A stretch of 64,000 bases of DNA from Selaginella moellendorffii (taxonomy: Eukaryota > Plantae > Lycopodiophyta), in the NCBI RefSeq assembly GCF_000143415.4, contig NW_003314346.1, positions 62,001 to 126,000 on the forward strand. The letters are read 5' to 3'. Below the pieces are notes generated by a model that saw only the letters and a list, made by a program, of their open reading frames with translations, was not told where the DNA came from and did no database searches. How positions within the stretch are numbered: the first letter of the stretch is position 1; the number at the start of each line of letters is the position of its first letter. Position numbers and translations under genes: made by a program. Of this stretch, positions 20,393 to 50,673 are shown in pieces.

Positions 20393-21121
20393 NNNNNNNN
20401 NNNNNNNNNNNNNNNNNNNNNNNNNNNNNNNNNNNNNNNNNNNNNNNNNNNNNNNNNNNNNNNNNNNNNNNNNNNNNNNNNNNNNNNNNNNNNNNNNNNN
20501 NNNNNNNNNNNNNNNNNNNNNNNNNNNNNNNNNNNNNNNNNNNNNNNNNNNNNNNNNNNNNNNNNNNNNNNNNNNNNNNNNNNNNNNNNNNNNNNNNNNN
20601 NNNNNNNNNNNNNNNNNNNNNNNNNNNNNNNNNNNNNNNNNNNNNNNNNNNNNNNNNNNNNNNNNNNNNNNNNNNNNNNNNNNNNNNNNNNNNNNNNNNN
20701 NNNNNNNNNNNNNNNNNNNNNNNNNNNNNNNNNNNNNNNNNNNNNNNNNNNNNNNNNNNNNNNNNNNNNNNNNNNNNNNNNNNNNNNNNNNNNNNNNNNN
20801 NNNNNNNNNNNNNNNNNNNNNNNNNNNNNNNNNNNNNNNNNNNNNNNNNNNNNNNNNNNNNNNNNNNNNNNNNNNNNNNNNNNNNNNNNNNNNNNNNNNN
20901 NNNNNNNNNNNNNNNNNNNNNNNNNNNNNNNNNNNNNNNNNNNNNNNNNNNNNNNNNNNNNNNNNNNNNNNNNNNNNNNNNNNNNNNNNNNNNNNNNNNN
21001 NNNNNNNNNNNNNNNNNNNNNNNNNNNNNNNNNNNNNNNNNNNNNNNNNNNNNNNNNNNNNNNNNNNNNNNNNNNNNNNNNNNNNNNNNNNNNNNNNNNN
21101 NNNNNNNNNNNNNNNNNNNNN
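20393..21121. other. Assembly gap
   Basis: Run of N. Confidence 1.
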
Positions 21122-24100: not shown

Positions 24101-26639
24101 GATGCCTTGTCATTGATGTTGTTGATATTGAGATTCGAGTGAAATGAGATATCCTTCCAAGGATTGATATTGAGTTTCATTAGTCCTGATGATAATAGTG
24201 TTGATGATTTGGCTATAGCTTTGTGTTGTTAGCATTCATGCATTTGCTAGTTAGCAACTATATTGACGTTCAAATGAACTGAGTGGCAAGTTGAGTTAGT
24301 TGTGTTCTAGATGAGATTGTTTAGTAAGGGTTAAGCTTTGGCTTTTCCTTGAAAAGTGATTTAGTCGTGGACTATGCTAACTTTACGAGATGATGTGTTA
24401 GTGATTGATATTGAAGTGATTGAATCCTTGTTGGGATTTTAGTTGAAATATACCAATCATTGATGATTCTTCTTGTGCTTGCTATGAAGTGAGTTACGTC
24501 TTGCTATAGATGGATTCATGGAGGATCATTTAGTGATCACTTGTTGAGCATAGCTCCATTGTGCTTAGCTTTTGGATTGATGCAGAAATGCTCTTCATTA
24601 GCTTTAGCATTATGAAGTTTGGCTTATGGATGTGTTGAGAAAGATGTTGTGGGTTGCATCACGATTTCTTCTTTCACATTGAAGTTAGCTTTTATGAGAC
24701 TTGTGATCATTATTAGGCAAGACTTGGGTATAGGCTTCTTTGAGCTTTGGTTCTTGAGTTTTGTGCTCATTGTTCCATTTGTTAGAAGTTGTTGGGGAAA
24801 GCATTTTGGCTCATTAGCTTCGATGTTGAAGTTGGTTTTTGCATCTGGCAATCATTGGTGATGATTGACTATCATCTAGGGTAGTTGATTGTCCTTATCA
24901 CAAGTTTTGCTTGATTATTGTTGGTTTGAAATTATTTGCTATTCTTCGGGATGGTAGATTCTTTCTTCAACGATGATTATACATCACTATATTGATGGGC
25001 TGATTGACGATCTTTCATGAGGTAGTCATGGGGTAGCTACTGTCGACTGGTCACATAACCCGCCTCTCTGTCGATGTTCCTTATTCCGTGAAAGGGTGTG
25101 ACCGTGTAAACAACTCTAAACTGCCTGTTGCCAGTAGTCTATCTAAACCTTACCGACGGGTTTGGTTTCTTTGCTCAGGAGGGTTGGGGCCTCTGGCTTC
25201 TCTCTCTATGTTCCTGCGGGCAGGGCATATCACACTTTTGTAGCTGGGTGACACCCAGAGCAGCAAGGGTGGCTGACTCCGTTGGTCATTTTCTTGTCGG
25301 CGACGGCCGGGAGGTGTCTGAGCTGGTAGCGCATCCACGTTAGACAAAGAGGTTGCCCCCTAACTCATTTAAGTTGGTGCATTTCTCACATAGTGTGAGT
25401 ACCGTGAACTTTTTCTGGAGTTGTTTCCTTGGCGGTATTCTAGACTCGAGTATGCATCGACGAGGACGTCGATCTTCCCAAGGGGGGGAGAGTGTCGCGA
25501 ATGTGACTTCAGGTATCGAAAGTTACCTGTCGGCTAGTCCTTACGGACACTCTTACCTTACTGCCATGACGGCAGGAGGTCGGTATTGCTGGACCCTTTA
25601 TCAGTCCCTCTTGTGCTAGTGGAGTTAACTGGGCATTTCGAGTGTACTTAGACCGGACGAGCATAAGGACGGAATTCCTACGTGTTATTAGCTAAGCATA
25701 CTTAGCCCGGTAAGGAGTTCCCGTCTCGTTTTGTCTTGCACTTGCTAGTGACAAGAACCCTCGCGTATTGAGATTAGTCCCTCAATATCGCTACATGATA
25801 GCTTACCGTGTCTGCCAAACACCCTCGCTATCATGCCCTTTGTGTTAGTCTCATTTCGGTCCCAAATGCTATTTATGGAAAGTGTTTAGATTCACTCATT
25901 TGGCATATCTACAGAATGTAGAGATCGGCCCGAACACAATGGTGTTCGTCCCGTGTCCAAATTCACAATCTAGGGACATTCCATAATTAGTAAGTTTCGA
26001 GTTTGTCCCAGAGACTAACTCCTGATACTAAGGGAGGCTTGGGGTGAAAGCCCAAAGCGTGTGTTCCTCAAAGGGGGGGGGGCTATGGGGGGTTCCAAAT
26101 GTATAGTAGGGATAGTGGGTAGGTCGGGCATGGCTGACCAACCTGAGGCATAGTCTAGCTCCCGCTTGCGTGCCTGTCCTTGTTCTGCGTCCGGCTTGGG
26201 TCTAAGCCCAAGTTCCATTCCATGCTAGCTGGTGGAGTACCCATATTCTCACGTTAGGCCACCGGTATGCCGAAATAGCGCCAGACTCCGTTTGGCTCCG
26301 TTTTGCGTGCTGGTCCTGGCATTGGGATGCTGGTTGCTCCAGGACTGTTCCAAGTCGCTCCGGGCTCCTGTCCCTTCGCTCCTTGGGCTATATGCTCGGG
26401 AGTTGCTCCGTGGTCCGGTTCCATCACTCCTTGGCGTCACGCTTGGGAGTTTGGCACCGTTCCTTCGTTTAGTGGCCCAAGGCCCTGAACCTCGGGTTCC
26501 TATGGACACGTGGCACGGACACGTGGTATGTGACACGTGGCATCTGTCACGTGGCACAAAGAGGTTTTAGGTTCCGCTTCGTGGTGTTATCCTATGGTAA
26601 ATCACCATAGGATAAAGGGTCAAAACCACGTGCGCTACA
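21122..26639 (+). mobile_element. Family A copy in inverted orientation with an internal deletion near 25020
   Basis: PBS TGGTATCAGAG near 21190; internal region is the reverse complement of ~16200-20020; PPT GGGGGGGAGAG; LTR 25493-26639. Confidence 0.88.
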
Positions 26640-28264
26640 TTTGGTATATGATACTTTCAACTTTATACCATCCATGCACTTATAACCCGCCTCTCTGTCA
26701 ATGTTCTTTATTTCGTTGAAAGGGCGTGACCGTGTAAACAACTCTAAACTGCCTGTTGACAGTAGTCTATCTAAACCTTACCGACGGGTTTGGTTTCTTT
26801 GCTCAGGAGGGTTGGGGCCTCTAGCTTCTCTCTCTATGTCCCTGCGGGCAGGGCATATCACACTTTTGTAAGCTGGGTGACTCCCAGAGCAGCAGGGGTG
26901 GCTGACTCCGTTGGTCATTTCCTTGTCGGCGACGGCCGAAAGGTGTCTGAGCTGGTAGCGCATCCACGTTAGACAAAGAGGTTGCCCCCTAACTCATTTA
27001 AGTTGGTGCATTTCTCACATAGTGTGAGTACCGTGAACTTTTTCTGGAGTTGTTTCCTTGGCGGTATTCTAGACTCGAGTATGCATCGACGAGGACGTCG
27101 ATTTTCCCAAGGGGGGGAGAGTGTCGCGAATGTGACTTCAGGTATCGAAAGTTACCTGTCGGCTAGTCCTTACGGACACTCTTACCTTACTGCCATGACG
27201 GCAGGAGGTCGGTATTGCTGGACCCTTTATTAGCCCCTCTTGTGCTAGTGGAGTTAACTGGGCATTTCGAGTGTACTTAGACCGGACGAGCATAAGGACG
27301 GAATTCCTACGTGTTATTAGCTAAGCATACTCGGCCTGGCTTTTAGTTCTCTTTTGCTCTGTCTTGCACTGGCTTGACAAGAACCCTCGCGTATTGAGAT
27401 TAGTCCCTCAATAATGCTACATGATAGCTTACCGTGTCTGCCAAACACCCTCGCTATCATGCCCTTTGTGTTAGTCTCATTTCGGTCCCAAATGCTATTT
27501 ATGGAAAGTGTTTAGATTCACTCATTTGGCATATCTACGGAATGTAGAGATCGGCCCGAACACAATGGTGTTCGTCCCGTGTCCAAATTCGCAATCTAAG
27601 GACATTCCATATTTAGTAAGTTTCGAGTTTGTCCCAGAGACTAACTCCTGATACTAAGGGAGGCTTGGGGTGAAAGCCCAAAGCGTGTGTTCCTCAAGGG
27701 GGGGGGGGCTATGGGGGGTTCCAAATGTATAGTAGGGATAGTGGGTAGGTCGGGCATGGCCGACCAACCTGAGGCATAGTCTAGCTCCCGCTTGCGTGCC
27801 TGTCCTTGTTCTGCGTCTGGCTTGGGTCTAAGCCCAAGTTCCATTCCATGCTAGTTGGTGGAGTACCCATATCCTCGCGTTAGGCCACCGGTATGCCGAA
27901 ATAGCGCTAGACTCCGTTTGGCTCCGTTTTGCGTGCTGGTCCTGGCATTGGGATGCTGGTTGCTCCAGGACTGTTCCAAGTCGCTCCGGGCTCCTGTCCC
28001 TTCGCTCCTTGGGCTGTATGCTCGGGAGTTGCTCCGTGGTCCGATTCCATCACTCCTTGGCGTCACGCTTGGGAGTTTGGCACCGTTCCTTCGTTCAGTG
28101 GCCCAAGGCCCTGAACCTCGGGTTCCTATGGACACGTGGCACGGACACGTGGTATGTGACACGTGGCATCTGTCACGTGGCACAAAGAGGGTTTAGGTTC
28201 CGCTTCGTGGTGTTATCCTATGGTAAATCACCATAGGATAAAGGGTAAAAACCACGTGCGCTAC
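25493..28264 (+). mobile_element. Family A mini-derivative: LTR - ~480 bp (PBS stub, 3' UTR, PPT) - LTR
   Basis: LTRs at 25493-26639 and 27122-28264; TTTGGTAT follows the first and a PPT precedes the second. Confidence 0.85.
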
Positions 28265-29718: not shown

Positions 29719-32700
29719 ATTCCTCATCACTTGAAATAACAATGCCACTTCCACTAACACAAGTGCTAGCAATGTTAATGCCTCAACTACACATCTTCTC
29801 CATCCAACAATCTACTCCAAGTGCTAACGGATCAACCGACAAGCTATAGCAAATGAATGCTACAACCCTTTTCCAACACCTAATGGGCAAACTCAAGGAA
29901 ACAAGGTACCAACTTAAGCTTAGCATAATGGACCACTATAGAGAATCCAGTCAAAGCTACTACAAATACCAAATGTAGCGCACGTGGTTTTGACCCTTTA
30001 TCCTATGGTGATTTACCATAGGATAACACCACGAAGCGGAACCTAAACCCTCTTTGTGCCACGTGACAGATGCCATGTGTCACATGCCACGTGTCCATGC
30101 CACGTGTCCACAGGAACCCAAGGTTCAGGGCCTTGAGCCACTGAACAAACGAACGGTGCCAAACTCCCAAGCGTGACGCCAAGGAGTGATGGAACCGGAC
30201 CACGGAGCAACTCCTGAGCATATAGCCCAAGGAGCGAAGGGACAACAGCCCGAAGCGACTTGGAACAGTCCTGGAGCAACCAGCATACCAATGCCAGGAC
30301 CAGCACGCAAAACGGAGCCAAACGGAGTCTGGCGCTATTTCGGCATACCGGTGGCCTAACGTGAGGATATGGGTACTCCACCAGCTAGCATGGAATGGAA
30401 CTTGGGCTTAGACCCAAGCCGGACGCAGAACAAGGACAGGCATGCAAGCGGGAGCTAGACTATGCCTCAGGTTGGTCGGCCATGCCCGACCTACCCACTA
30501 TCCCTACTATACATTTGGAACCCCCCATAGCCCCCCCCCATTGAGGAACACACGCTTTGGGCTTTCACCCCAAGCTTCCCTTAGTATCAGGAGTTAGTCT
30601 CTGGGACAAACTCAAAACTTATTAAATATGGAATGTCCTTAGATTGCGAATTTGGACACAAGACGAACACCATTGTGTTCAGGCCGATCTCTACATTCCG
30701 TAGATATGCCAAATGAGCAAATCTGGACACTTTCCATAAATAGCATTTGGGACCGAAAGGAGACTAACACAAAGGGCATGATAGCGAGGGTGTTTGGCAG
30801 ACACGGTAAGCTATCATGTAGCGATATTGAGGGACCAATCTCAATACGCGAGGGTTCTTGTCAAGCCAGTGCAAGACAGAGCAAAAGAGAACTAAAAAGC
30901 CAGGCCAAGTATGCTTGGCTGAATAGACACTTAGGAATTCCGTCCTTATGCTCATCCGGCCAAGTACAGATGCAAAGTCCAGTTTACTAACACTTGAACA
31001 AGAGGGGCTGATAAAGGGTCCAGCAATACCGACCTCCTACCATCGTGGCAGTAAGGTAAGAGTGTCCGTAAGGACTGGTCGACAGGTAACTTTCGATACC
31101 CGAAGTCACATGCGCGACACTCTCCCCCCCTAGGGAAGATCGACGTCCTCGTCGATGCATACTCCAGTCTAGAATACCGCCAAGGAAACAACTCCATAAA
31201 AAGTTCACGGTACTCACACTATGTGAGAAATGCACCAACTTAAATGAGTTAAGGGGGTAACCTCTTTGTCTAACGCGGATGCGCTACCAGCTCAGACACC
31301 TCCCGGCCGTCGCCGACAAGGAAATGACCAACGGAGTTAGCCACCCTTGCTGCTCTGGGCGTCACCCAGCTACAAAAGTGTGATATGCCCTGCCCGCAGG
31401 AACATAGAGAGAGAAGCCAGAGGCCCCAACCCTCCTGAGCAAAGAAACCAAACCCGTCGGTAAGGTTTAGATAGACTACTGTCAACAGGCAGTTAGAGTT
31501 GTTTACACGGTCACGCCCTTTCAACGTAACAAGGAACATCGACAGAGAGGCGGGTTATGTGACAAGTCGACAGTAGCTACCCCATGACTAGAGATTTCAC
31601 CATGCACACGAAGTGCCGAAGCCAGTCTGCCTATACTGGCCCAAACTCAAAGATCAATGGATGGACAATATCAAAGTCAGAGACAATGATATCTGAGAAG
31701 CTTAATTACTAGTGATTATATCTTAGAGTAGAACACAAAAGTATTCTAAGCAAGTTATCATCCGATAAACCAGTAGTATTGTAGATAGGAACCACCAACA
31801 GATTATCATAATTTGGCAAACACAGGAATGACCATCCAACAAAATTCAATAGCTAGTATATCATTAAGGAAACTCAATGATGAAACTTAACTATCGAAGA
31901 TAGTAGACAGTAAGCCAACAACTTACTAGAGAGAACTCAAAGAACACAAAGTATCATTGACTAACAAGCACAATGCTCGCGAATGTATCACCTAAAGGAA
32001 ATAACATCCAAATCTATCAAAACTAACTCGAGCAACAATCAACAGAAGAAAATGAATGTGGTAAGACCAACAAACACTCATTCCTGCCAACTATCACAAA
32101 AGCCAATCTGAATAGATCCCAGCCAACAATACCAAGGAACTCAAGTTGCCTAAGCAAGTGTCAGCAACATCCTACTGACGTCTCAAACCCAAGAGACCAA
32201 TCCAGGCAAACCACAAAGAATATGTGGTATTGCGAAAAGGCATAAGCTATCAAAGAGAACAACTAACCATCATGAAAGATCATCAATCATTCCATCAATA
32301 AAGAGATGCATAATCATCGTTTAAGAAGGAATCCACCATCCCGAAGAACGGCAAACCATTCTATACCAACAATAATCAAGCAAAACTTTTCGACATGGAT
32401 AATCAATTATCCTAGATGATAGTCAATCATCACCAATGATTGCTAGATGCAAATACTAACTTCAACATCAAAGCTAAAGAGCCAAAAAAATGCCTTCCCC
32501 AACAACTTTTAACAAATGGAACAATGAGCATAAAACTCAAAGAACCAAAGCTCGAAGAAGCCTATAGCTAAGTCTTGCTTAATAATGATCACGAGTCTCA
32601 TAGAAGCTAACTTCAATGCTAAAGAAGAAATTATGGTGCAACCCACAATGTCTTCTTCAACACATTCATAAGCCAAACTTCATAATGCCAAAGCTAATGA

Positions 32701-35700
32701 AGAGCATTTCTGCATCAATCCAAAAGCTAAGCACAATGGAGCTATGCTCAACAAGTGATCACTAAATGATCCTCCATGAATCCATCTATAGCAAGACGTA
32801 ACTCACTTCATAACAAGCACAAGAAAAATCATTAATGATTGATATATCTCAATTGAAATCCAAGAAGGATTTAATCACTTCAATGCCAATCATTAACTCT
32901 TCCTCTCATAGAGGTAGCATTGTCCACGACTAAATCACCTTTCAAGGAAAAGCTAAAGCTCAATCCTCTACTAAATAATCTCGTCTAGAACACTACTAAC
33001 TCAACTTGCCACTCAGTTTGTTTGAACGTCAACACAGTTGCTAACTAGCAAATGCACGAATGCCAACAACATAAATCTATAGCCAAATCATCAACACTAT
33101 ATTCATCAAGACTAATGAAACTCAATATCAATCCTTAGAAGGATAGCTCATTTCACTCAAGTCTCAATATCAACAATGTCAACGACAAAGCATCACTTCA
33201 ATGCCATCAACATCAGGACAAAGCTAGAAGAAAGCAAGAGTGAATCACCACTCGGAGCTTTCCAGCAACCAAGCTAACCAAAGTCGAAGATACTATACTT
33301 AGTATCCGAGACCAATCCGTTAGCAAAACTCAGTGACAGATAACACATCATCAAGGAGTGAATCACCACATCCAAGACTCAATGAAATCCAACACTATAG
33401 ACCAAATGTAACCAAATGATATCGACAAAGGAATTGACATGCCACCATGGAAAAACCATGTCAGCCTAATGACACGATCCTCCGCAACACCATCCAGTAA
33501 AGCAAGCCCATCACTGCTAAATCATCATCGAGCAAAGCAAGTATCAACAGTCTTTTTGACAAAGTCTACAAGTAATCACTAGTCGCAAAGCAACTAACAA
33601 TCACCCCTCAACTTGCCTTCACAAGACCCAAACACCAACTTTTGTCATCAAGTTATATACTTATCTAGCATAAACATAATACCTCAAACATGAGATAAAA
33701 GTTCATGGACAAGCACAAACTAAATGACCACTCGAATCCAACTCAACCGCAATAAGCTCACCAATGCATTTAGTCAATAGCTCTGAGCATGCCTTGAAGA
33801 GGCTAGCTATGTGATCAACACTCAGTCGAAACTAAAGTGAAGACCATGAGATGGACTCATATCGGTACACAACCTCCTCATAGACAAAGCTATAGTACGG
33901 GTACCAACATCTCAGCTTGCAAACAACTAAGTTGGACATCACCATCCTCAGCCAAGGCGTAGGGCCACTAAGACCAAATCAAGATCAGTGAGAGCTCACT
34001 ACTCTCATAGAGTCTAACGTAATGCAAGGTGCAACCTGCCACGAAGCATAACGCTACAAAAGAAAGGTACAAGGGTCACCTTTCTGAGAAAAGTGCAACA
34101 ACCACTTTTCTACACCAACTCCAGACTCTATCCAACTCAATTGCCTTAGCCCCAAAAGTTAGCATCCCTTTCAGGCTGCATCATACAAACTATCTACTAA
34201 GGTTTAAGCCAACCGAAGCCAACTCCAACCCCTTCAACAGTTTGTACTGGCTTTCGAAAATGGAATGGTTTTCGAGCAAAGTGATCAATAGATCAGCCAT
34301 TGGAAAAGTCTAAGAAAATTTATGGAAAATTTTCCATCCTAGGGAAAGAATAACTCTCAGTCCAGGAATGCAAACTTTCAAGACTCAACCAACTTCCTCA
34401 ACTTCCTCAACTTCCTTCAAGACTCAACCAACCGGTTCACCTCAACAAAAATTCTCATGATCCAAGAATATGCTTAAACATCGAACATCTTTGCCCATCT
34501 AACTGATATCCAACACCGACATCCGCAAACTGCAAAATGAACATCCAAGGCTTGATCACTAAGACCACATCTTCGGATATCCACATTGCACTAACACTCT
34601 TCTTCAATCACCTTCAAGATCCAATGTGAAGCCAAAACACTAACAAGATAAATGACATGAAAAATCAAGGTCCAAGGAAAATTCCTCATCACTTGAAATA
34701 ACAATGCCATTTCTATTAACACAAGTGCTAGTGATGTCAATGCCCCAACTACACACCTTCTCCATCCAATAATTTATTCCAAGTGCTAACGGATCAATAG
34801 ATGAGCTATAGCAAATGAATGCTACAACCCATTCCCAACACCTTATGGGCAAACCCTCAAGGAAACAAGGTACCAACATAAGCTTAGCATAATGGACCAC
34901 CATTGAGAATCCAGTCAAGGCTACTACAATGCTACTTCGTGCAAGTAGACTAGCTTCTCCATCAACCACTTTGGGGTTGATCATCATTTACCCAAGCAAC
35001 TTTGTAAACACATTGCTCATTATCACATGGATATGATATAAATCACAATGACTTGATCATCAATTGAGTAACGCAATGAGCAAGGCTTATGTCATTACTT
35101 CAAACGTTCATGTGAATATCAAATGCCAACTCGATTCGACAAAATGCAACATAAATGCCACACTCCACCAATAGAGGTTTACGACACCCAACACCACTAA
35201 CTTTTGTTCACAACACGGACAAGCTCATGCCACTCTCTTTCTGACCAAACTCAACACTAATCCAACACCAAGCTACTCAAGGAGCAATAGTAAGGTTCCC
35301 TAGAAAAGAATTGAGCATTGCAACCCAAGTCTTCCAATAGCAAGCTTTAGACAAAATGGTTTAACGTTTCACCGCTATCCATCCCACAACTCACCATTGT
35401 AAGACCACCATCTCCAACATGCATCAAGATAGGGACTCTTGATTGCATAATGTGAACACGAGCAATGAGTCACACCTCATTGCAAATCATTTCTCCAAGA
35501 AGAGAACATGATTTACGTTTTTGATCCTCCGTCCCCGATGCCTCTCTTTTCGGTCTCATCTTTGACCAAACCTCAAGCTTGCTTTCGCACTGCCTTCAGT
35601 TCAATCGAAGAAAAGTTTATAAGAGAGCACAGCCATGACTATTTGAACCAATAGACTAATCCCTTATAGTCTTGATTGATCCACTTATAATCATGCCTAG

Positions 35701-36991
35701 GAAGGATCCACTAGTGCCGTGCTAAACAGCTACGGACTAGCCTATTTGCTACTCATAGCAAACCCTCTTATGAGCCCAAGAGCAAGCTTATATAATACGG
35801 TACAAAATGGTAACCAAAACCATACCCAAGGAACAATTGCGAAGCCTTTGCACCCAAACGTGTACCCACTCGGATCATCGTTTTCATCTCTGCGTATGCT
35901 ATGAGACTAGTTGCCCAATCTCATTGGATAGTATCGCTGAGACGTATCCTCTGATACCAAATGTAGCGCACGTGGTTTTGACCCTTTTGTAAGCGACTAA
36001 ATTTTCCATTCTACTTTAGTCACTTAACCACACCTCCGACCACTTGGAGGAGTCCCATTCACAACCTCCATCAGTCCAATTCAGGACTTGGGACTTGCTA
36101 GCCCCAAGAATGGCATCCATGCCACTCCACACTTGCACCTGGTCCAAGTGCTCCACGTGTCCGGTCCTGAGACCGACACCCAAAGGTACCACTAACATCT
36201 CGGCCCGTTACGCTAAGGCCATGGCCATTCACCTTTGCTGCACTAGTGGTTCAACACCACTTGCATCACCACCCCGTCTCTCCAAGACTGGGCCATGTGT
36301 CCACGAGTGGTCATCCTAGATCCACTCCTTAGCATCCTTAGGATGCCCACAGACCTGGGGAATCGCCTTCCCCAAAGTCCCTTTGTCAATTCCTACCAAG
36401 TCCCTTTTTGCCCCTGGCCGTGTTTGCCAACACTGCCACTGGATCGAGGCCCACAGGCCCGACCACTAAGTCCCATGGTCCTCTGGGACTTCCTCACCAC
36501 ACGACTGTGTCCTTGGTCACTACCCCAGAGGACTGCTCCTCTTCCTTTCCACAGTCTAGGCCTTTGGGACAACATTTCGGAACACCGTGGCCTTACGCGA
36601 GCCACCTGGGTACTCTCCCCGCCTTTCGCCTTTAGGTGCTCTAGCCATGGGCTTAGAGCGAGGTTCCATTGAGCCACACCTGGTATCCAAGTAGGTAGTG
36701 CCACCCACACTTGGACTGGGAGCATCGGCCAGTCGATCTCCCGGGGGAACTAGAGCCGGCTCTTGAACACTTCACCAAGCTACTTCACTTGTCGGTCTGT
36801 GTTCACTCTAGTCTTGGACTTCCCAGTGGGCAGCTCATCACCCAACACTGGGTCTGGCCTTCCTGGGCCAAACTGGCCTTTCCTGGCCAAACTGGCTCCA
36901 CTGCAGTCCTCCCCCCTACTATACTTTTGGGGCTCACCAAACCCCCCAGGGTCTGGGAGACGAACGCTTTGGGCTTTCACCCTCTCAGGCT

Positions 36992-37580
36992 CCGGACTCG
37001 GACTCGGACTCGGACTCGGACTCGGACTCGGATTCGGACTCGGACTCGGGCTCGGGCTCGGTCTCGGCCTCGGCCTCGGTCTCGGTCTCGGTCCCGATCT
37101 CGGTCTCGGTCTCGGTCCCGGTCTCGGTCCCGGTCTCGGTCTCGACTTCGGACTCCATCTCGGGTCCATCTCGGGTCCATCTCGGACTCCATCTCGGACT
37201 CCATCTCGGGTCCATCTCGGACTCCATCTCGGACTCCATCTCGGGTCCATCTCGGACTCCATCTCGGACTCCATCTCGGGTCCATCTCGGACTCCATCTC
37301 GGACTCCATCTCGGGTCCATCTCGGGCCCCTCTCGGACTCCATCTCGGACTCCATCTCGGGTCCATCTCGGGTCCACCTCGGACTCCATCTCGGACTCCA
37401 TCTCGGACTCCACTTCGGACTCCAACTCGGGTCCATCTCGGACTCCACTTCGGACTCCACTTCGGACTCCAACTCGGGTCCATCTCGGACTCCACTTCGG
37501 ACTCCAACTCGGGTCCATCTCGGACTCCACTTCGGACTCCAACTCGAGTCCATCTCGGACTCCAACTCGAGTCCATTTCG
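36992..37580. repeat. Minisatellite in family B LTR: (GGACTC/GGTCTC)n, then 11-12 bp CCATCTCGGACT/CCATCTCGGGT units
   Basis: Directly visible. Confidence 0.95.
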
Positions 37581-40500
37581 GACACTCCCACGTGTCATGT
37601 GTTGGTCCTTTTGGGTCCCTTTTTGGAGCCTCGCCTTTTGCTCGCTTCGTGCTCGTTCCTCGAGCACTTTGTTGGGAGTTCCACTCCCGCTCTTGACTTT
37701 TCAAGTCGGAGCTTTTGGTCCAAACGTGTTACGCTCGTTTGGCTCTCGCTTCGGCCACTCCCATGTGGCGCCCTTCCGGCTCCACTTTGGGGCCTAGGGA
37801 TTTTGTGTCTCACAACTCCACCACCCATAGACGAAGTTCGATGTCCTCATCGAACGGTAAACCCTTTCATAAAGTAACACCCACACGTGTTACCATTTCC
37901 ATCCTTGGCACCTAGCCAATCTTTGTCTATGGTTTGACATCAAAGGCTCACCATGCCTTGTCCATCCTTTAAGGGGCGTAGTCTCTCCAACTTAGAGACT
38001 GATTGGACCACATGTAATGGTTCTCCCCTTTTATTGGTTTAGTTCTCGCTAAACCTCTTAGAGACCCTTCTCTAAGTCAATCCCACTACTCCTTCTCGAG
38101 TAGTCTCAATTTCCATCTATTGAATGTTTGCACCTTGGAACTTTTACTCTTTTGACTTTTTGGAAGTCAATTTTCTAGGTGTCTCCAAAACCTTGCATTG
38201 CACAGATTGTGCAACTCCACTTCCCTATCCTAGGAAGTTCATTACTTGAGGGCACCATCATCCTCTCTTCTATTTCGTGCCACCTTGGGCAAAGTTCCAT
38301 TTATCATACTTTGTGCTAGGGCTGTCCATGGCCCCATCATTTGGCTACCTTACCGCTCCCTCACTTGGAGCCTCCACTTTCGCCAACTTGGAGCATTTCG
38401 GAATCCCTCCTTGGAAACACACTTCCTTTCCCGCAACTTGTTAGCGTCCAACACATTAGTGTTCCTCGCCTAACTTTGTCACTTGGATTCCTTCCAAGAG
38501 ATTCCACGGCCCTATCTTGGCCACTCATCTTTTGCTCCTATCCGTTGATTGTTGCACCAAGCAACATCGAATCTCTACCTCCCTCCTTGAGGTATTGTTT
38601 CGGTTCCATAGCAAAGACTCTTCTTTGCCAAGTCCGGAGGACGTTCACCCCTAGTACGTCTCTTTAGCATCTTCTGCTATGGGCTCTATCCACGGCCCAA
38701 CTTCGTGACCCTCCCATGGGTCTTTTATAGAGACTACTTTCCTCGGACTCACTATGCCATCGCACGGACATAGTTTATTTCCCTTAGGTGCTCTTCCCAC
38801 TTGGTTATCACGACCAAGCCACACCACCTTAAACAGTTCAATTTCAACATTTTGAACCAGGAACTTCATTCCTTAGCCAAACAAGGACCTTGTCCTTATC
38901 TGGCCATAAGATCACCTAGTGATCTCACCTTGGCACCTTAACAGAGTTGCCAAGAGGTACTTGGTTTTCTAGACCTCCAAGTTGTTGACTATAACCCCGG
39001 GGGCATCCCCCACACTTGGCGGTGCACCCAAGCCAGCCCTTACGGCCAAGGGTTCATAGCAACTGAGATTAGGTGTCCCCATCTCACTCACCACGACCTC
39101 GGTGCCACTTGCACCAAAGCGTTCAAGTTAGATATGCTGAGCTTTCACACTAAGCAATCTAACCGTGCATCACGACTCCGAGGCATCCCTCGCTTGGCGG
39201 TGTGCCCAAACCAGTCTCCCCACTGAGAGTCCATGACCACCGAAATATGAGTGTCCTCATATTCCAAACCATCACCACGCCCTAGTGATTTGGGACTCGA
39301 ACCCAAGCACTAGAGGGTCGGGACTCGAACCCAACCTCCGTATATGCATCTACGGACGGCATCACACTAGATGCCTGGCGTGACTCCCCACGCCGGTGCA
39401 CCAACCTATTTTTAAAGCGCGCTACAGATCACAGCTTAGGAACCTAGTTCCTCCACACTGCCAAGTCCTCTCACTTGACATGTCTGTGATTATGCATGGA
39501 CTCCTCCATGCTCGGCCCCATGGCCCACCCTTTTTGAAGTTATCACCTTCAACTAGGGTCTTTGTTCCCCCGACGTGCCAATCTCACTTGGCAAGTTCTC
39601 CGACCATTGTAACATGGTTCCTGCATAAGCGTGAAAGTCCTTGACCATCGACTTTCGTTCAAAGCCCTCTCTTTGAACACTCGGGAACTACTTCCCTAAC
39701 CTTGATAACCTTGCCTCATGGCAAGCTTCAAGACCACGCTTCTGCTGCGCCACTCTGATTTCGCGCGTTCCATGAACCATTTACACTTGGCCTTTCTAGG
39801 TACTACGCTACCTAGAATAGTCTTTGGGAACCTTGAAGGAACTCTATCCCTCAGCTTGCTAAGGCCTCCCTTTTTGCAAGCCTTCCAAATGCCATATAGT
39901 CTAACATGGACAATTCCATATTTTAGACTCTCCATGGCATCACGGTTGCTAGCGGCAACACCCTTGAGCCCCCACTTGATTTTCCACTCCCAGCTGGCAT
40001 AACCAACCTTGGTTATGCCCTTTGATTCCTACGGTTCGGTTCTATCCCCTTACTTCTTGCTTTTTGGCTTCACACCTTTCCTTTGGTCATTCTCCTCTAG
40101 ACCGGGAGGATAGCTTTACACTTTCTATCTTGCTTTAGCAAGTATTCTTAGGGATGAACCTACCCAATAGCCTAGGGAGTGGTTCCTCAATCCGGGTATG
40201 CTCACCTTATAATCCCACACACTGGGATTACATTGTTGCTTATGGGCCTTTACATGCCCATCACTAGCATTGCCAAAATTCCATTTTTGGCTTTGTCCAA
40301 CTCGGGTAGACAGTCCTCTCCTGTCTCCGCAACCTTGGACATTTGGATAGCACCTTCTATCCATCATTCGCTAGGGACTTAGTCCCTTGGGCTTTCTCCA
40401 TTGCCCTCGCGACATCAAACACCACCTTCTGGTGTTCTAGAGTGTTCAGGTGTCCCAATGATGGCTTTCTTGACAATGAGTATTTCCTTTTATGACATTG

Positions 40501-42890
40501 ACTTACTATATCGCAACACAAGCAACTTATCCCCCGTAAGGGTATATCCAACTTCCTTATACTATTAAGAAGTCTTGGGTAGCTACCTTCTACCCATTTA
40601 ACCAGTTATTTTGCACCTCTTGCTTAATTGCCTCATAGTTGTCAAGTCCTACAACTCATTGCTTGGTGCTTTCACACCTCCATCATTATCTGGGTCACCA
40701 CACTCCAACTGCATGCTCTGCAACTTAGGCTATGCTATTCCCATTTCCATTGGGATTCCTTTGGCAAGGGGTTCTCATGAACCCACCAACATAGCCTCAA
40801 GGTATCACACCTTGGCACATTTGGTGTCTCCACACCATCGGCTCCACGAGCCTACCTCTATGACATTTCCCTTCGTGTCTAAGTCTTTGCCAAGACCAAC
40901 ACCGCTCTTTCTCATGCCAACCATCCGTTAGCACTGCACCATAAAGGTCACACACAACTTTGTTTCAAAGTTGTTTTCTTTTGGGAACACCTTTCCCATA
41001 ACTTTCGCATGGCACATTTTGCCATCGATGAGATACCCTCTGTCCTCATCCTTGGATCCTATGATCCCCCCCCATCCTTTGTGGGGTACAACACACCTCA
41101 GTCCAAATGCTTCCATCAGTCCTTTTAGGACCATCCGTTGACTCTACTTGAGTCATCCAGCAGTTTTGGACTTGGTCAATCCACAGACTCGTAAGGTCCT
41201 ACTTGTGAGGCACTAGCTCACTGGAATACACTTCTTGCATTCTTGTCCTACTCAAAAGGACTATTTTCACAAGTGTTACTCCGACACTTGATTTTTTTTT
41301 TTTTTTTCTGGGGGCAACCTTTGCCCCTTAGGACTACTTGTCCATGTGATGAGAATACCAACTCATCCACTCAATACACCCCCAACTCCTTGGGTTGTTC
41401 CAGCATTTATTAGAGGTAGCCCTGGCTACCATTTCAAGGACTTGAGTCCTCTTCCGTATTTGACCTTCCACGGTCATTACCTTTGGTCTCACATTCATGA
41501 GCACCAACCTCAACTATATGAGGATAATCTTGTGACTCCTTTATTGTTTTGGAGTCTTTATCTTTCCCGTGATCCCAACTTTAGTTGTTTACCACAACAA
41601 CCTTAGCCAATTTGCTGAGACAAATGCTCATCCGGATCACATCCTCAACTCAATGAGGAAAACCTTGCACTGTTCCCAAGATCCCAAAGTCGTTCCACTA
41701 TTGGCCCTTTTCTATCCACCACCTCGTCTACAAGTTCACTCATGAACTGTAATGGAGAGCCATGTCTTCCCGACTTGCTACTCCTCAAGGATAGGCCCAC
41801 TCGTCGGACCTTCCGATGCCAACACTAGTGGTGATATACTTGAGCACCAATAAAAGTCGGACTAAGGAACAGCTCCGATACCAAGTTGTAAGCGACTAAA
41901 TTTTCCATTCTACTTTAGTCACTTAACCACACCTCCGACCACTTGGAGGAGTCCCATTCACAACCTCCATCAGTCCAATTCAGGACTTGGGACTTGCTAG
42001 CCCCAAGAATGGCATCCATGCCACTCCACACTTGCACCTGGTCCAAGTGCTCCACGTGTCCGGTCCTGAGACCGACACCCAAAGGTACCACTAACATCTC
42101 GGCCCGTTACGCTAAGGCCATGGCCATTCACCTTTGCTGCACTAGTGGTTCAACACCACTTGCATCACCACCCCGTCTCTCCAAGACTGGGCCATGTGTC
42201 CACGAGTGGTCATCCTAGATCCACTCCTTAGCATCCTTAGGATGCCCACAGACCTGGGGAATCGCCTTCCCCAAAGTCCCTTTGTCAATTCCTACCAAGT
42301 CCCTTTTTGCCCCTGGCCGTGTTTGCCAACACTGCCACTGGATTGAGGCCCACAGGCCCGACCACTAAGTCCCATGGTCCTCTGGGACTTCCTCACCACA
42401 CGACTGTGTCCTTGGTCACTACCCCAGAGGACTGCTCCTCTTCCTTTCCACAGTCTAGGCCTTTGGGACAACATTTCGGAACACCGTGGCCTTACGCGAG
42501 CCACCTGGGTACTCTCCCCGCCTTTCGCCTTTAGGTGCTCTAGCCATGGGCTTAGAGCGAGGTTCCATTGAGCCACACCTGGTATCCAAGTAGGTAGTGC
42601 CACCCACACTTGGACTGGGAGCATCGGCCAGTCGATCTCCCGGGGGAACTAGAGCCGGCTCTTGAACACTTCACCAAGCTACTTCACTTGTCGGTCTGTG
42701 TTCACTCTAGTCTTGGACTTCCCAGTGGGCAGCTCATCACCCAACACTGGGTCTGGCCTTCCTGGGCCAAACTGGCCTTTCCTGGCCAAACTGGCTCCAC
42801 TGCAGTCCTCCCCCCTACTATACTTTTGGGGCTCACCAAACCCCCCAGGGTCTGGGAGACGAACGCTTTGGGCTTTCACCCTCTCAGGCT

Positions 42891-43527
42891 CCGGACTCGG
42901 ACTCGGACTCGGACTCGGACTCGGACTCGGATTCGGACTCGGACTCGGGCTCGGGCTCGGTCTCGGCCTCGGCCTCGGTCTCGGTCTCGGTCCCGATCTC
43001 GGTCTCGGTCTCGGTCCCGGTCTCGGTCCCAGTCTCGGTCCCGGTCTCGGTCTCGACTTCGGACTCCATCTCGGTCTCGACTTCGGTCTCGACTTCGGAC
43101 TCCATCTCGGGTCCATCTCGGGTCCATCTCGGACTCCATCTCGGACTCCATCTCGGGTCCATCTCGGACTCCATCTCGGACTCCATCTCGGGTCCATCTC
43201 GGACTCCATCTCGGACTCCATCTCGGGTCCATCTCGGACTCCATCTCGGACTCCATCTCGGGTCCATCTCGGGCCCCTCTCGGACTCCATCTCGGACTCC
43301 ATCTCGGGTCCATCTCGGGTCCACCTCGGACTCCATCTCGGACTCCATCTCGGACTCCACTTCGGACTCCAACTCGGGTCCATCTCGGACTCCACTTCGG
43401 ACTCCACTTCGGACTCCAACTCGGGTCCATCTCGGACTCCACTTCGGACTCCAACTCGGGTCCATCTCGGACTCCACTTCGGACTCCAACTCGAGTCCAT
43501 CTCGGACTCCAACTCGAGTCCATTTCG
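42891..43527. repeat. Same minisatellite in the second family B LTR, 48 bp longer
   Basis: Directly visible; the offset between the two LTRs changes from 5899 to 5947. Confidence 0.95.
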
Positions 43528-43754
43528 GACACTCCCACGTGTCATGTGTTGGTCCTTTTGGGTCCCTTTTTGGAGCCTCGCCTTTTGCTCGCTTCGTGCT
43601 CGTTCCTCGAGCACTTTGTTGGGAGTTCCACTCCCGCTCTTGACTTTTCAAGTCGGAGCTTTTGGTCCAAACGTGTTACGCTCGTTTGGCTCTCGCTTCG
43701 GCCACTCCCATGTGGCGCCCTTCCGGCTCCACTTTGGGGCCTAGGGATTTTGTG

Positions 43755-43961
43755 TCTGATACCAAATGTAACCTCCTGAGTTTGGACTTCCCGGGAGGTC
43801 ACCCATCCCAGTACTATTCAAACCCAAGGACGCTTAACCCCAAATATCCCAAGACCCTTAACCGATTGGAAAAGGGGGTGCACTCTTTTTCATGGGCCCT
43901 TTCCCTCTATATTTGAACCCCTATGGATCGTCTCTCGAGTCGTTCCCTTTGGTTGCTTACA
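43755..43961 (-). mobile_element. Cassandra-type TRIM 5' LTR (43767-43961, 195 bp) plus tRNA-iMet PBS
   Basis: TGTAA...TTACA termini. The minus strand contains GTTAAGCGTCCTTGGG...TAGTACTGGGATGGGTGACCTCCCGGGAAGTCC (5S internal control region) and is followed by TT-TGGTATCAGA. Confidence 0.88.
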
Positions 43962-45094
43962 CCTTTATCCTATGGTGATTTACCATAGGATAACACCACG
44001 AAGCGGAACCTAAACCCTCTTTGTGCCACGTGACAGATGCCATGTGTCACATGCCACGTGTCCATGCCACGTGTCCACAGGAACCCAAGGTTCAGGGCCT
44101 TGAGCCACTGAACGAACGAACGGTGCCAAACTCCCAAGCGTGACGCCAAGGAGTGATGGAACCGGACCACGGAGCAACTCCTGAGCATATAGCCCAAGGA
44201 GCGAAGGGACAAGAGCCCGGAGCGACTTGGAACAGTCCTGGAGCAACCAGCATACCAATGCCAGGACCAGCACGCAAAACGGAGCCAAACGGAGTCTGGC
44301 GCTATTTCGGCATACCGGTGGCCTAACGTGAGGATATGGGTACTCCACCAGCTAGCATGGAATGGAACTTGGGCTTAGACCCAAGCCGGACGCAGAACAA
44401 GGACAGGCACGCAAGCGGGAGCTAGACTATGCCTCAGGTTGGTCGGCCATGCCCGACCTACCCACTATCCCTACTATACATTTGGAACCCCCCACAGCCC
44501 CCCCCCCTTGAGGAACACACGCTTTGGGCTTTCACCCCAAGCCTCCCTTAGTATCAGGAGTTAGTCTCTGGGACAAACTCAAAACTTACTAAATATGGAA
44601 TGTCCTTAGATTGTGAATTTGGACACGGGACGAACACCATTGTGTTCAGGCCGATCTCTACATTCCGTAGATATGCCAAATGAGCAAATCTGGACACTTT
44701 CCATAAATAGCATTTGGGACCAAAATGAGACTAACACAAAGGGCATGATAGCGAGGGTGTTTGGCAGACACGGTAAGCTATCATCTAGCGAATATTGAGG
44801 GACCAATCTCAATATCGCGGGGGTTCCTAACACTAGCAAGTGCAAGCCAACATCATGAGTTTCTCATCACCGTGTCAAGTCTGCTTGACTAAATGATAAC
44901 TTAGGATTTCCTTCCTTAGTGCCCTTCCGGTCTAAGTGCACATGTGATGACCAGTTTCTCAACTAGCTTAGGTGGAAACTGATAACGGGTCCAGCAATAC
45001 CGACCTCCTGCCATCGTGGCAGTAAGGTAAGAGTGTCCGTAAGGACTAGCCGATAGGTAACTTTCGATACCCGAAGTCACATGCGCGACACTAA

Positions 45095-46167
45095 TGTAGC
45101 GCACGTGGTTTTGACCCTTTATCCTATGGTGATTTACCATAGGATAACACCACGAAGCGGAACCTAAACCCTCTTTGTGCCACGTGACAAATGCCACGTG
45201 TCACATACCACGTGTCCGTGCCACGTGTCCATAGGAACCCGAGGTTCAGGGCCTTGGGCCACTGAACGAAGGAACGGTGCCAAACTCCCAAGCGTGACGC
45301 CAAGGAGTGATGAAACCGGACCACGGAGCAACTCCCGAGCATATAGCCCAAGGAGCGAGGGGACAGGAGCCCGGAGCGACTTGGAACAGTCCTGGAGCAA
45401 CCAGCATACCAATGCCAGGACTAGCACGCAAAACGGAGCCAAACGGAGTCTGGCGCTATTTCGGCATACCGGTGGCCTAACGTGAGGATATGGGTACTCC
45501 ACCAACTAGCATGGAATGGAACTTGGGCTTAGACCCAAGCTGGACGCAGAACAAGGACAGGCACGCAAGCAGGAGCTAGACTATGCCTCAGGTTGGTCGG
45601 CCATGCCCGACCTACCCACTATCCCTACTATACATTTGGAACCCCCCACAGCCCCCCCCCCTTGAGGAACACACGCTTTGGGCTTTCACCCCAAGCCTCC
45701 CTTAGTATCAGGAGTTAGTCTCTAGGACAAGCTTAAAACTTACTAAATATGGAATGTCCTTAGAATGCGAATTTGGACACAGGACGAACACCATTGTGTT
45801 CAGGCCGACCTCTACATTCCGTAGATATGCCAAATGAGCAAATCTAGACACTTTCCATAAATAGCATTTGGGACCGAAATGAGACTAACACAAAGGGCAT
45901 GATAGCGAGGGTGTTTGGCAGACACGGTAAGCTATCATGTAGCGATATTGAGGGACCAATCTCAATACGCGAGGGTTCTTGTCAAGCCAGTGCAAGACAG
46001 AGCAAAAGAGAACTAAAAAGCCAGGCCAAGTATGCTTGGCTGAATAGACACTTAGGAATTCCGTCCTTATGCTCATCTGGCCAAGTACAGATGCAAAGTC
46101 CAGTTTACTAACACTTGAACAAGAGGGGCTGATAAAGGGTCCAGCAATACCGACCTCCTGCCATCGT
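45095..46167 (-). repeat. Family A LTR, truncated by an oppositely oriented LTR
   Basis: Starts TGTAGCGCAC four nucleotides after the previous LTR ends. Confidence 0.88.
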
Positions 46168-46388: not shown

Positions 46389-46488
46389 NNNNNNNNNNNN
46401 NNNNNNNNNNNNNNNNNNNNNNNNNNNNNNNNNNNNNNNNNNNNNNNNNNNNNNNNNNNNNNNNNNNNNNNNNNNNNNNNNNNNNNNN
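46389..46488. other. Assembly gap (100 N)
   Basis: Run of N. Confidence 1.
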
Positions 46489-49300: not shown

Positions 49301-50196
49301 GGGGGGGAGAGTGTCGCGAATGTGACTTCGGGTATCGAAAGATACTTGTCGACCAGTCCTTACGGGCACTCTTTCCTTACTGCCATGACGGCAGGAGGTC
49401 GGTACTGCTGGTTCCCTTTAATAGCCCCTCTTGTCCAAGTGTTAGTAAACTGGACTTAGCATCTGTACTTGGCCGGATGAGCATAAGGACGGAATTCCTA
49501 AGTGTCTATTTTGCCAAGCATACTTGGCCCGGCTTTTTAGTTCTCTTTTGCTCTGTCTTGCACTGGCTTGGCAAGAACCCTCGCATGTTGAGACTAGTCC
49601 CTCAATATCGCCGGATGATAGCTTACCGTGTCTGCCAAACACCCTCGCTATCATATCCTTTGTGTTGGTCTCATTTCGGTCCTAAATGCTAAATATGGAA
49701 AGTGTCCAGATTAGCTCATTTGGCATATCTACGGAATGTAGAGATCGGCCTGAACACAATAGTGTTCGTCCCGTGTCCAAATTCGCAATCTAAGGACATT
49801 CCATATTTAGTAAGTTTCGGACTTGTCCCAGAGACTAACTCCTGGTACTAAGGGAGGCTTGGGGTGAAAGCCCAAAGCGTGTGTCCCTCAAGGGGGGGGG
49901 GCTGTGGGGGGTTCCAAATGTATAGTAGGGATAGTGGTTGGAATGCATGTCCGACCACCTGAGACATTAGTTTGGCTTCCGCTGGGCTGTGTCGCTCCTT
50001 GTTCTGTGTCCGGCTTGGGTCTAAGCCCAAGCTCCACGTTAGGCCACCGGTATGCCAAAATTGTGCCAGACTCCGTCTGACACCATTTTGCGTGCAGGTG
50101 CTAGATACGGGGAGCTGGTGCTCGTGGGATTGTACCGGACCCTCGTTTCGTAGCGCAACGGGCTTGGAGTTCGGCTCCAAATTCAGGTGCGCTACA
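49301..50196 (+). repeat. PPT and 3' LTR (49312-50196, 885 bp) of the chromovirus
   Basis: GGGGGGGAGAG followed by TGTCGCGAA...GTGCGCTACA; homologous to family A LTRs. Confidence 0.9.
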
Positions 50197-50416
50197 GTGT
50201 CTCTGCACCCCGAATTGTAGTCTGGAGAAGGGTCCTCTGCAGCGGACCGGGTTTAAGTCCCTTGGAACGGGACGCCAGAGAGGGTGAGAGCCCCGTCTAG
50301 CCCGGACCCTGCTGCATCACGAGGCTCTTTCGGCGAGTCGGGCTGTTTGGGAATGCAGCCTTAAGTGGGTGGTAAATTCCATCCAAGGCTAAATACTGGT
50401 GAGAGACCGATAGCGC

Positions 50417-50461
<45 letters not shown>

Positions 50462-50673
50462 TAAAAAGTGCTTGAAATTGCTGGGAGGGAAGCGAATGGA
50501 TGCCTTGTGCGCCCCTTGGTTGTGTGTGGAACGGCGAGAGCTGGTCTGCCAAGCAATGCAAGGGGCTGTCCAGCATGGGAGGACGCGGCGGGATAACGGC
50601 TTGTGAGCCTCTGGCTCCCTGCCAATGCCGCCGCTGCCTCTGAAAATGGTGGGGTGCTCCGGTGCCCCGCCAG
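50197..50673 (+). pseudogene. 26S rDNA fragment (477 bp)
   Basis: Near-identical to 6309-6785. Confidence 0.95.

What the first reader, a model, noticed from the sequence alone, without database searches (positions are those of the whole stretch)
35983..43966. Composite retroelement: Cassandra LTR+PBS fused to a large LTR element inside one TSD
Seen: the family A LTR is interrupted by 35988-43961 and CCTTT is duplicated on both sides, yet the two ends belong to different families. The left end is a 1.8-kb family B LTR; the right end is a 195-bp Cassandra LTR. They join at a TCT microhomology between the Cassandra PBS and the family B LTR, which has lost 4 terminal nt. The hybrid termini TGTAAGCGACTAA / TTGGTTGCTTACA form an 11/13 inverted repeat, better than family B's own ends. 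Inference: a chimeric cDNA made by strand transfer between co-packaged RNAs may have integrated as one unit, placing a Pol III promoter and a second PBS upstream of a large element.
Basis: partly seen in the sequence, partly recalled or inferred. Interest (0 to 1): 0.75.

Follow-up and report, generated by a model that had tools for sequence, protein, structure and literature searches.

The report
Cassandra end fused to LARD retrotransposon
One very young retrotransposon insertion in this plant genome joins the end repeat of a tiny 5S-carrying "Cassandra" element to a whole large gene-less element; it is most likely a fossil copying accident, and it hints, without proving, that both parasites are copied in the same particle.

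Summary

- **Insertion:** 35988-43961 is a precise insertion into a family A LTR. Five uninterrupted family A paralogs in the window carry a single CCTTT at that site, so the 5-bp target-site duplication (TSD) is real.
- **Structure (minus strand):** a 195-bp Cassandra-type LTR, a TT spacer, and the first 10 nt of a tRNA-iMet primer-binding site (PBS). These are joined through a 3-nt microhomology to the 5' LTR of family B, which lacks its first 4 nt. B's own PBS, a 4.07-kb non-coding interior, its polypurine tract (PPT) and an intact 3' LTR follow.
- **Family B:** it is LARD-like, and its LTRs differ by only 2 transitions in 1,822 nt, so the insertion is very young.
- **Mechanism:** the Cassandra piece is exactly "LTR + part of the PBS", the make-up of plus-strand strong-stop DNA. 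One misplaced strand transfer onto family B minus-strand DNA, followed by normal completion, yields exactly this product with two integrase-competent ends. I rate this single chimeric-cDNA integration at about 0.7.
- **Rivals:** two insertions at the same 5-mer followed by a deletion, capture of Cassandra cDNA at a break, and misassembly all need coincidences.
- **Not supported:** the chimera should not be able to reproduce itself. The Pol III/second-PBS consequence is speculation.
- **Not tested:** the genome-wide junction search could not be run.
- **Earlier work:** notes from this scan (unchecked) report about a dozen other Cassandra chimeras on other DNA of this genome, so this is one more case of a recurrent event.

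The parts
35962..35987 (-). Last 26 nt (U5 end) of the host family A LTR, including the left TSD copy CCTTT at 35983-35987. The family A PBS (sense TGGTATCAGAGG) lies at 35948-35959 after a TT spacer.
35988..37814 (-). Family B 3' LTR, complete, 1,827 bp. In sense it runs TGTGAGAC...CGCTTACA. It holds a minisatellite of about 580 bp with a 12-nt unit.
37815..37826 (-). Family B polypurine tract (sense GGGTGGTGGAGT), directly upstream of the 3' LTR.
37827..41871 (-). Family B interior, non-coding. The longest sense ORF is 80 aa. There is no Pfam hit and no DNA or translated match elsewhere in the window.
41872..41883 (-). Family B PBS (sense TGGTATCGGAGC, one mismatch to the standard tRNA-iMet PBS). 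An ACT spacer follows at 41884-41886.
41887..43757 (-). Family B 5' LTR, 1,871 bp, lacking its first 4 sense nt (TGTG).
43755..43764 (-). First 10 nt of the Cassandra PBS (sense TGGTATCAGA). Its last 3 nt (AGA; TCT on the + strand, 43755-43757) are shared with family B LTR nt 5-7, which is the junction microhomology. The TT spacer is at 43765-43766.
43767..43961 (-). Cassandra-type LTR, 195 bp, TGTAA...TTACA. The 5S-derived part is 43770-43857. BoxA, the 18-nt spacer and boxC lie at 43797-43839.
43962..45092 (-). Remainder of the host family A LTR, beginning with the right TSD copy CCTTT at 43962-43966.

Best explanation
A single integration of a chimeric cDNA made by one aberrant strand transfer during reverse transcription.

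Shown:
- One precise insertion with a 5-bp TSD.
- The outer ends are a Cassandra U3 terminus and a family B U5 terminus.
- The Cassandra part is exactly LTR + TT + PBS nt 1-10.
- The join has 3 nt of microhomology and lies 4 nt inside the family B LTR.
- Family B is non-coding and very young.

Inferred:
1. Cassandra RNA and family B RNA, both primed by tRNA-iMet, were reverse-transcribed in the same particle.
2. Nascent Cassandra plus-strand strong-stop DNA (U3-R-U5 plus the first 10 nt copied from the tRNA) left its own template.
3. It paired through its 3'-terminal AGA with family B minus-strand DNA at U3 nt 5-7, next to the PPT.
4. It was extended through the family B LTR into family B's tRNA primer.
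5. This chimeric strong-stop DNA then made the normal second transfer through the family B PBS, and both strands were completed.

An equivalent route is that the family B minus strand, 4 nt short of the end of its own strong-stop template, jumped onto Cassandra strong-stop DNA. Either route needs only one error. Either gives Cassandra LTR, PBS stub, family B LTR minus 4 nt, family B PBS, interior, PPT and a full family B LTR, with blunt ends that an integrase can use. Integration then made the CCTTT duplication.

The locus is a dead-end record, not a new mobile family. Transcription from the internal family B LTR would yield ordinary family B copies.
For: - **TSD.** The TSD is exact against five empty-site paralogs.
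- **Cassandra part.** It stops inside the PBS and contains nothing from a Cassandra interior or second LTR. That is the composition of plus-strand strong-stop DNA, as described in the established model reviewed in PMC6894440.
- **Family B breakpoint.** It lies 4 nt from the U3 terminus, next to the site where plus-strand synthesis normally starts.
- **Family B LTRs.** They are 99.9% identical, as expected from one reverse-transcription cycle.
- **Shared signals.** Both elements use a tRNA-iMet PBS. Cassandra's 5' terminus is the reverse complement of family B's 3' terminus over 7/7 nt and 11/13 nt, which fits use of one integrase.
- **Precedent.** TSD-flanked complex LTR elements have been explained by template switching in PMC1950507.
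- **Local parallels.** Two family A LTR copies in this window also end in LTR + TT + 6 nt of PBS joined to ectopic sequence.
- **Leads only.** Unchecked notes from this scan list about a dozen other Cassandra chimeras in this genome, some inside one TSD.
Against: - This is one locus. There is no read-level or allelic confirmation.
- No reference Cassandra copy is in the window, so the completeness of the 195-bp LTR rests on its TGTAA/TTACA ends alone.
- Three nucleotides of microhomology is equally typical of cellular end joining.
- Co-packaging is inferred, not observed.
- The '4 nt lost' depends on placing the family B LTR start at the TG after the PPT.
- The family B helper element is unknown.
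Confidence: 0.7

Rival explanations
1. Two ordinary insertions followed by a deletion. Family B and a complete Cassandra inserted one after the other at the same AAAGG 5-mer. A microhomology-mediated deletion of about 400 bp then removed Cassandra from PBS nt 8-10 onward, the middle TSD copy and the first 4 nt of family B.
For: Nested insertions and small deletions are abundant in this window. A 3-nt microhomology is typical of such deletions.
Against: The second element must have used exactly the 5-mer that abuts the first; otherwise the family A LTR would show extra or missing bases, and it does not. Both deletion ends must also fall at special places: inside a 12-18-nt PBS, and 4 nt inside a 7.8-kb element. 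Together these coincidences are improbable.
Confidence: 0.12
2. Family B integrated alone. Later a double-strand break at its 5' boundary was repaired by end joining that captured free Cassandra cDNA (strong-stop DNA or a linear fragment). A close variant: one integrase complex held a Cassandra U3 end and a family B U5 end from two separate cDNA molecules, and the cell joined the two free inner ends.
For: The Cassandra piece starts exactly at a natural cDNA end, and the join shows microhomology. Filler DNA at plant break repairs is well known (own knowledge).
Against: In the break version, the break must fall exactly between the intact TSD copy and family B, with no loss on the family A side. 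In the two-molecule version, Cassandra must be trimmed back by about 390 bp to end just inside the PBS. Neither explains the breakpoint positions better than a strand transfer does.
Confidence: 0.1
3. Assembly or cloning artefact. Reads from different loci were merged through the high-copy Cassandra LTR, or a chimeric clone created the junction.
For: The region is repeat-rich and has N gaps at 20393-21121 and 46389-46488. Cassandra is a multi-copy repeat according to the scan's notes.
Against: A false join would not give matching 5-bp duplications at one and the same position of the family A LTR on both sides. A 3-nt overlap cannot drive an assembler join. The junction lies 2.6 kb from the nearest gap.
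Confidence: 0.05

Closest known systems
TSD-flanked complex LTR retrotransposon insertions made by abnormal template switching (Sabot and Schulman 2007, PMC1950507)
   Same: A larger-than-unit element carrying an extra LTR, flanked by one 5-bp TSD, and explained by an error of strand transfer in a particle holding two templates.
   Different: Those complexes join two copies of one family as LTR-interior-LTR-interior-LTR, with near-identical outer LTRs and the switch in R. Here the partners are unrelated families. The outer LTRs differ, only an LTR plus a PBS stub comes from one partner, and the join is a 3-nt microhomology between a PBS and a U3 end.
Cassandra TRIMs (Kalendar et al. 2008; Kalendar et al. 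2020, PMC7215508)
   Same: A short LTR with a 5S-derived segment: boxA, 18 nt, boxC, then the PBS TGGTATCAGAGC 32 nt downstream.
   Different: Only one LTR and 10 nt of PBS are present. BoxA has one mismatch. The 5S match is below the Rfam threshold and lacks about 30 nt of 5S. The host is said by scan notes to be a lycophyte, outside the fern-to-angiosperm range given in the papers. Common descent with published Cassandra was not tested.
LARDs, large retrotransposon derivatives (definition quoted in PMC4079214)
   Same: Long LTRs, a PBS, a PPT and a non-coding interior of more than 4 kb.
   Different: No sequence relation to described LARD families was tested. The helper element is unknown.
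LTR swapping and inter-family recombinants in plants (for example soybean SNRE/SARE, Du et al. 2010, cited in PMC6894440 and PMC4079214), and non-homologous retroviral recombination at short homologies (own knowledge)
   Same: Chimeras that arise from heterologous co-packaging and copy-choice by reverse transcriptase.
   Different: Those recombinants stay replication-competent and found new lineages. This product has mismatched outer LTRs and should not breed true.

Membership tests
Cassandra (5S-bearing TRIM) | [quoted passage not shown] | tested here: met
   one match at 43797-43839 (-), with exactly 18-nt spacing, boxC 13/13 and boxA 11/12. No match in 100 shuffles.
Cassandra (5S-bearing TRIM) | Recognisable 5S rRNA-derived sequence | tested here: inconclusive
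   RF00001 scores 32.4 bits, below the gathering score of 38, with E 4.3e-5 for this stretch. About 32 model positions are missing.
Cassandra (5S-bearing TRIM) | PBS TGGTATCAGAGC 5-200 nt after boxC | tested here: met
   TGGTATCAGA lies 32 nt after boxC. The last 2 nt are replaced by the junction.
Cassandra (5S-bearing TRIM) | Complete TRIM structure (two short LTRs, short interior, PPT) | tested here: not met
   Only one LTR plus a PBS stub is present at this locus. It is a fragment of such an element, not a member copy.
Cassandra (5S-bearing TRIM) | Pol III transcription from the LTR | not testable with these tools
   No expression data are available here.
LARD | LTRs, PBS and PPT, with a large non-coding interior (usually more than 4 kb) | tested here: met
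   The interior is 4,072 bp. The longest sense ORF is 80 aa, with no Pfam hit and no translated match in the window. LTRs that are 99.9% identical rule out decay after insertion.
Template-switch complex insertion (Sabot and Schulman type) | Flanking TSD of the length typical for the superfamily | tested here: met
   CCTTT on both sides, checked against five empty-site paralogs.
Template-switch complex insertion (Sabot and Schulman type) | Highly similar outer LTRs and two complete cores of one family | tested here: not met
   The outer LTRs are a 195-bp Cassandra LTR and a 1.8-kb family B LTR, and there is one core only. It works like that class but is not a member of it.

The most novel reading that the evidence does not exclude
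This locus, together with the other Cassandra chimeras noted in this genome, records Cassandra being routinely co-packaged and reverse-transcribed with chromovirus-dependent non-coding elements. If so, a chromovirus lineage is the long-sought helper of 5S-bearing TRIMs, and mis-transfer of plus-strand strong-stop DNA is a regular source of new element architectures in this plant.
Probability: 0.35. Interest if true: 0.7.

Novelty: new variant of a known kind. Interest (0 to 1): 0.5.

Why it matters
The helper that mobilises Cassandra is unknown; PMC10886601 says there is 'no indication' of which autonomous family does it. A chimera whose anatomy points to Cassandra strong-stop DNA being extended on another element's cDNA is physical, though circumstantial, evidence that the two share a particle, a primer tRNA and an integrase.

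With LTRs only 0.11% diverged, the machinery was active recently. That makes the idea testable, for example by sequencing extrachromosomal cDNA or particle RNA.

On its own this is a single dead-end fossil with no evident effect on the host. Its value lies in the collection of such cases.

Tried and rejected
- **Junction search.** That collection is not expected to hold this plant, so the blanks say nothing.
- **Read or allele support.** I tried look-up of encoding contigs with an ORF that spans the junction.
- **Scan index by sequence.** Look-ups with the junction and with the family B LTR were blank.
- **Coding capacity of family B.** No ORF above 108 aa on either strand. No Pfam hit on the ten longest sense ORFs. 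No BLAST or tblastx match of the interior to the rest of the window. The idea that family B is a decayed autonomous element is rejected, because its LTRs are 99.9% identical.
- **Extended pairing at the junction.** I looked by eye for complementarity between the Cassandra PBS region and the family B PPT/U3 boundary beyond the 3-nt AGA. There were only scattered matches, so I make no claim.
- **Searches not spent.** The costly protein searches were not used, because nothing here rests on a protein. The bacterial genome collection was not scanned, because it cannot hold this DNA.
- **Organism.** The name Selaginella moellendorffii comes from the scan's earlier notes. I did not verify it.
Full report
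**What is there**

I read 35400-38200 and 41400-44600 and found that the element lies on the minus strand. Read in sense, the order is:

- host family A LTR, ending in AAAGG;
- a 195-bp LTR that starts TGTAAGC and ends GGTTACA (43961 down to 43767);
- a TT spacer;
- TGGTATCAGA, the first 10 nt of a tRNA-iMet primer-binding site;
- the family B LTR from its fifth nucleotide onward (43757 down to 41887);
- an ACT spacer;
- the family B PBS, TGGTATCGGAGC (41883-41872);
- a 4.07-kb interior;
- a polypurine tract, GGGTGGTGGAGT;
- a complete family B LTR running TGTGAGAC...CGCTTACA (37814 down to 35988);
- AAAGG again, then the last 21 nt of the family A LTR, TT and the family A PBS.

**The duplication is real**

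BLAST of the two flanks against the window shows that at least five other family A LTR copies cross this point, with exactly 5 nt of overlap between the left-flank and right-flank matches. In alignment A1 all five carry a single CCTTT where the interrupted copy has one on each side. The base before and the base after the repeat do not extend it. So 35988-43961 is one precise insertion, 7,974 bp long, with a 5-bp target-site duplication. These paralogs serve as empty-site controls, and that is much stronger evidence than a 1-in-1,024 chance match.

**The two partners**

*Family B*
- The two LTRs align over 1,822 nt with only 2 substitutions, both transitions, plus one 48-bp length difference inside a 12-nt-unit minisatellite.
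- With a generic plant rate of 1.3e-8 per site per year (own knowledge, not calibrated for this lineage), that is on the order of 40,000 years. Two substitutions give wide error limits.
- The interior has no ORF above 108 aa on either strand, and none above 80 aa in sense.
- The ten longest sense ORFs hit no Pfam family.
- The interior matches nothing else in the window by DNA or by translation.
- An element this young and this empty was non-coding when it inserted, so family B is LARD-like.
- Its LTR shares a 69-nt block with all family A LTRs, in the same orientation.
- The family A LTR is in turn 80% identical over 873 nt to sequence at 49310-50136, in the orientation of and about 600 bp downstream of a chromovirus fragment whose ORF carries RNase H, integrase and a chromodomain; I take it for that element's 3' LTR but did not map its ends.

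*The 195-bp LTR*
- It has a 5S rRNA match below the Rfam threshold: 32.4 bits against 38, E 4.3e-5.
- It fits the operational Cassandra query of Kalendar et al. 2020 (PMC7215508): boxA 11/12, exactly 18 nt of spacing, boxC 13/13, and the PBS 32 nt further on. There is a single match in the window and none in 100 shuffles.
- I therefore call it Cassandra-type.
- Whether it descends from the fern and seed-plant Cassandra or arose separately was not tested.

**The junction**

The family B LTR reads ...TGTG-AGA-CACAAAA and the Cassandra PBS reads TGGTATC-AGA-GC. The composite reads TGGTATC-AGA-CACAAAA. So 3 nt are shared, family B has lost TGTG, and Cassandra keeps PBS nt 1-10. The figure of 4 nt assumes that the family B LTR starts at the TG after the PPT. 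Only the intact 3' LTR can show this; the TG...CA convention and the 5/6 inverted repeat of the ends support it.

The outer termini match 11/13, against 9/13 for family B's own ends and 8/13 for Cassandra's own ends.

**Mechanism**

A contiguous U3-R-U5-PBS does not exist in the genomic RNA of an LTR element. It exists in plus-strand strong-stop DNA, which is the LTR plus a copy of the tRNA primer's 3' end (model reviewed in PMC6894440). The Cassandra part of the composite is exactly that unit, cut short after 10 nt of PBS. It carries nothing from a Cassandra interior or second LTR. The family B breakpoint lies 4 nt from the U3 end, next to the PPT where plus-strand synthesis normally starts.

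One error is enough. Nascent Cassandra strong-stop DNA pairs through AGA with family B minus-strand DNA at U3 nt 5-7. It is then extended through the family B LTR into family B's tRNA. After that it makes the normal second transfer at the family B PBS. Completing both strands gives precisely the observed order of parts, with a full 3' family B LTR and a 5' family B LTR short by 4 nt.

The mirror route gives the same product: the family B minus strand jumps from its own strong-stop template to Cassandra's, 4 nt before the end. The ends of the product are a genuine U3 terminus and a genuine U5 terminus, so concerted integration and a 5-bp TSD follow. These steps are inference from the anatomy and were not observed.

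**Why the rivals rank lower**

- *Two insertions plus a deletion.* The second element must have used the very 5-mer that abuts the first, because the family A LTR shows neither loss nor gain. Both deletion ends must also fall in a 12-18-nt PBS and 4 nt inside family B.
- *Break repair that captures Cassandra cDNA.* The break must fall exactly at the boundary, with an intact TSD copy beside it.
- *A two-molecule integrase complex.* About 390 bp must be trimmed back to the PBS.
- *Misassembly.* It cannot explain matching duplications at the same position of the family A LTR, and a 3-nt overlap cannot drive a join.

I give the single chimeric cDNA about 0.7.

**Consequences**

The composite should not breed true. 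Transcripts from the internal family B LTR would yield ordinary family B copies, whose U3 end is restored from the intact 3' LTR. No 3' Cassandra LTR exists to regenerate the 5' one.

In sense, the strand has TTTT at 43870-43873. After that there is no run of four T for 2,002 nt, until 41855, just past the family B PBS. A Pol III transcript could in principle read through the family B LTR, but nothing shows that it does.

**Context and novelty**

- TSD-flanked complex elements made by template switching are known (PMC1950507).
- Multi-LTR Cassandra copies and inter-element recombination are known in pear (PMC4079214).
- I found no published heterologous Cassandra chimera in the papers I read. 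The helper of Cassandra is stated to be unknown (PMC10886601).
- Earlier notes from this scan, which are unchecked leads, name the genome as Selaginella moellendorffii. They list about a dozen other Cassandra fusions with chromoviruses or large non-coding elements, several joined at the PBS or lying inside one TSD.
- So the scan has met this kind of event before, on other DNA of this genome. This locus adds a case with a distinct join, PBS to U3 end, that points specifically to strong-stop DNA.
- In this window two family A LTR copies also end in LTR + TT + TGGTAT joined to ectopic sequence, which fits the same error class.

**Limits**

- No tool here holds this genome or its reads.
- The two metagenome scans were blank, as expected.
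- There is no intact Cassandra copy in the window to confirm the LTR length.

Noticed in passing
window 29900-29999: A family A LTR copy (29973-31121) ends in LTR + TT + TGGTAT, only 6 nt of PBS. It then continues with family A interior from about 1 kb further in, joined at a 2-nt microhomology (AT). This looks like the same class of error as the finding, but within one family.
   Followed up: partly
window 25491-28264: Two family A LTRs in plus orientation (25491-26640 and 27120-28264) enclose only about 480 bp: TT + TGGTAT, 34 nt of unknown filler, then sequence that in other copies lies about 220-440 nt outside the U3 edge of a family A LTR, probably the 3' end of the family A interior. This is a miniature deletion derivative whose breakpoint again lies in the PBS.
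   Followed up: partly
window 45068-45118: The host family A LTR is followed head-to-tail by a second family A LTR. The junction reads ...GCGCTACA-TT-AG-TGTCGCGC..., like a 2-LTR circle junction. Another first-stage note (s1-382163) also flags this.
   Followed up: no
window 5643-5712: A 70-nt stretch, 86% identical to the PBS-proximal end of the Cassandra LTR (43767-43836), lies on the minus strand inside ITS1 between the 18S and 5.8S rRNA genes. It is covered by note s1-382103.
   Followed up: no
window 6207-8544 and 50164-50650: The 28S rRNA match spans model positions 24-3399 in only 2,338 nt, so the gene is internally shortened or interrupted. A second 28S 5' fragment of about 490 nt sits at 50164-50650, beside a family A-like LTR stretch that ends at 50136.
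   Followed up: no
window 36993-37583 and 42892-43530: The family B LTR carries a minisatellite of about 600 bp (12-nt unit CTCGGACTCCAT, about 50 copies, preceded by a hexamer run). The only length difference between the two LTRs, 48 bp, lies in it.
   Followed up: partly
window 36914-36982 versus 44469-44537, 30502-30570, 56188-56256, 62327-62395: A 69-nt block, 74-76% identical, is shared by the family B LTR and every family A LTR, in the same relative orientation. It may be a common promoter or R-region module of two otherwise unrelated LTRs.
   Followed up: no
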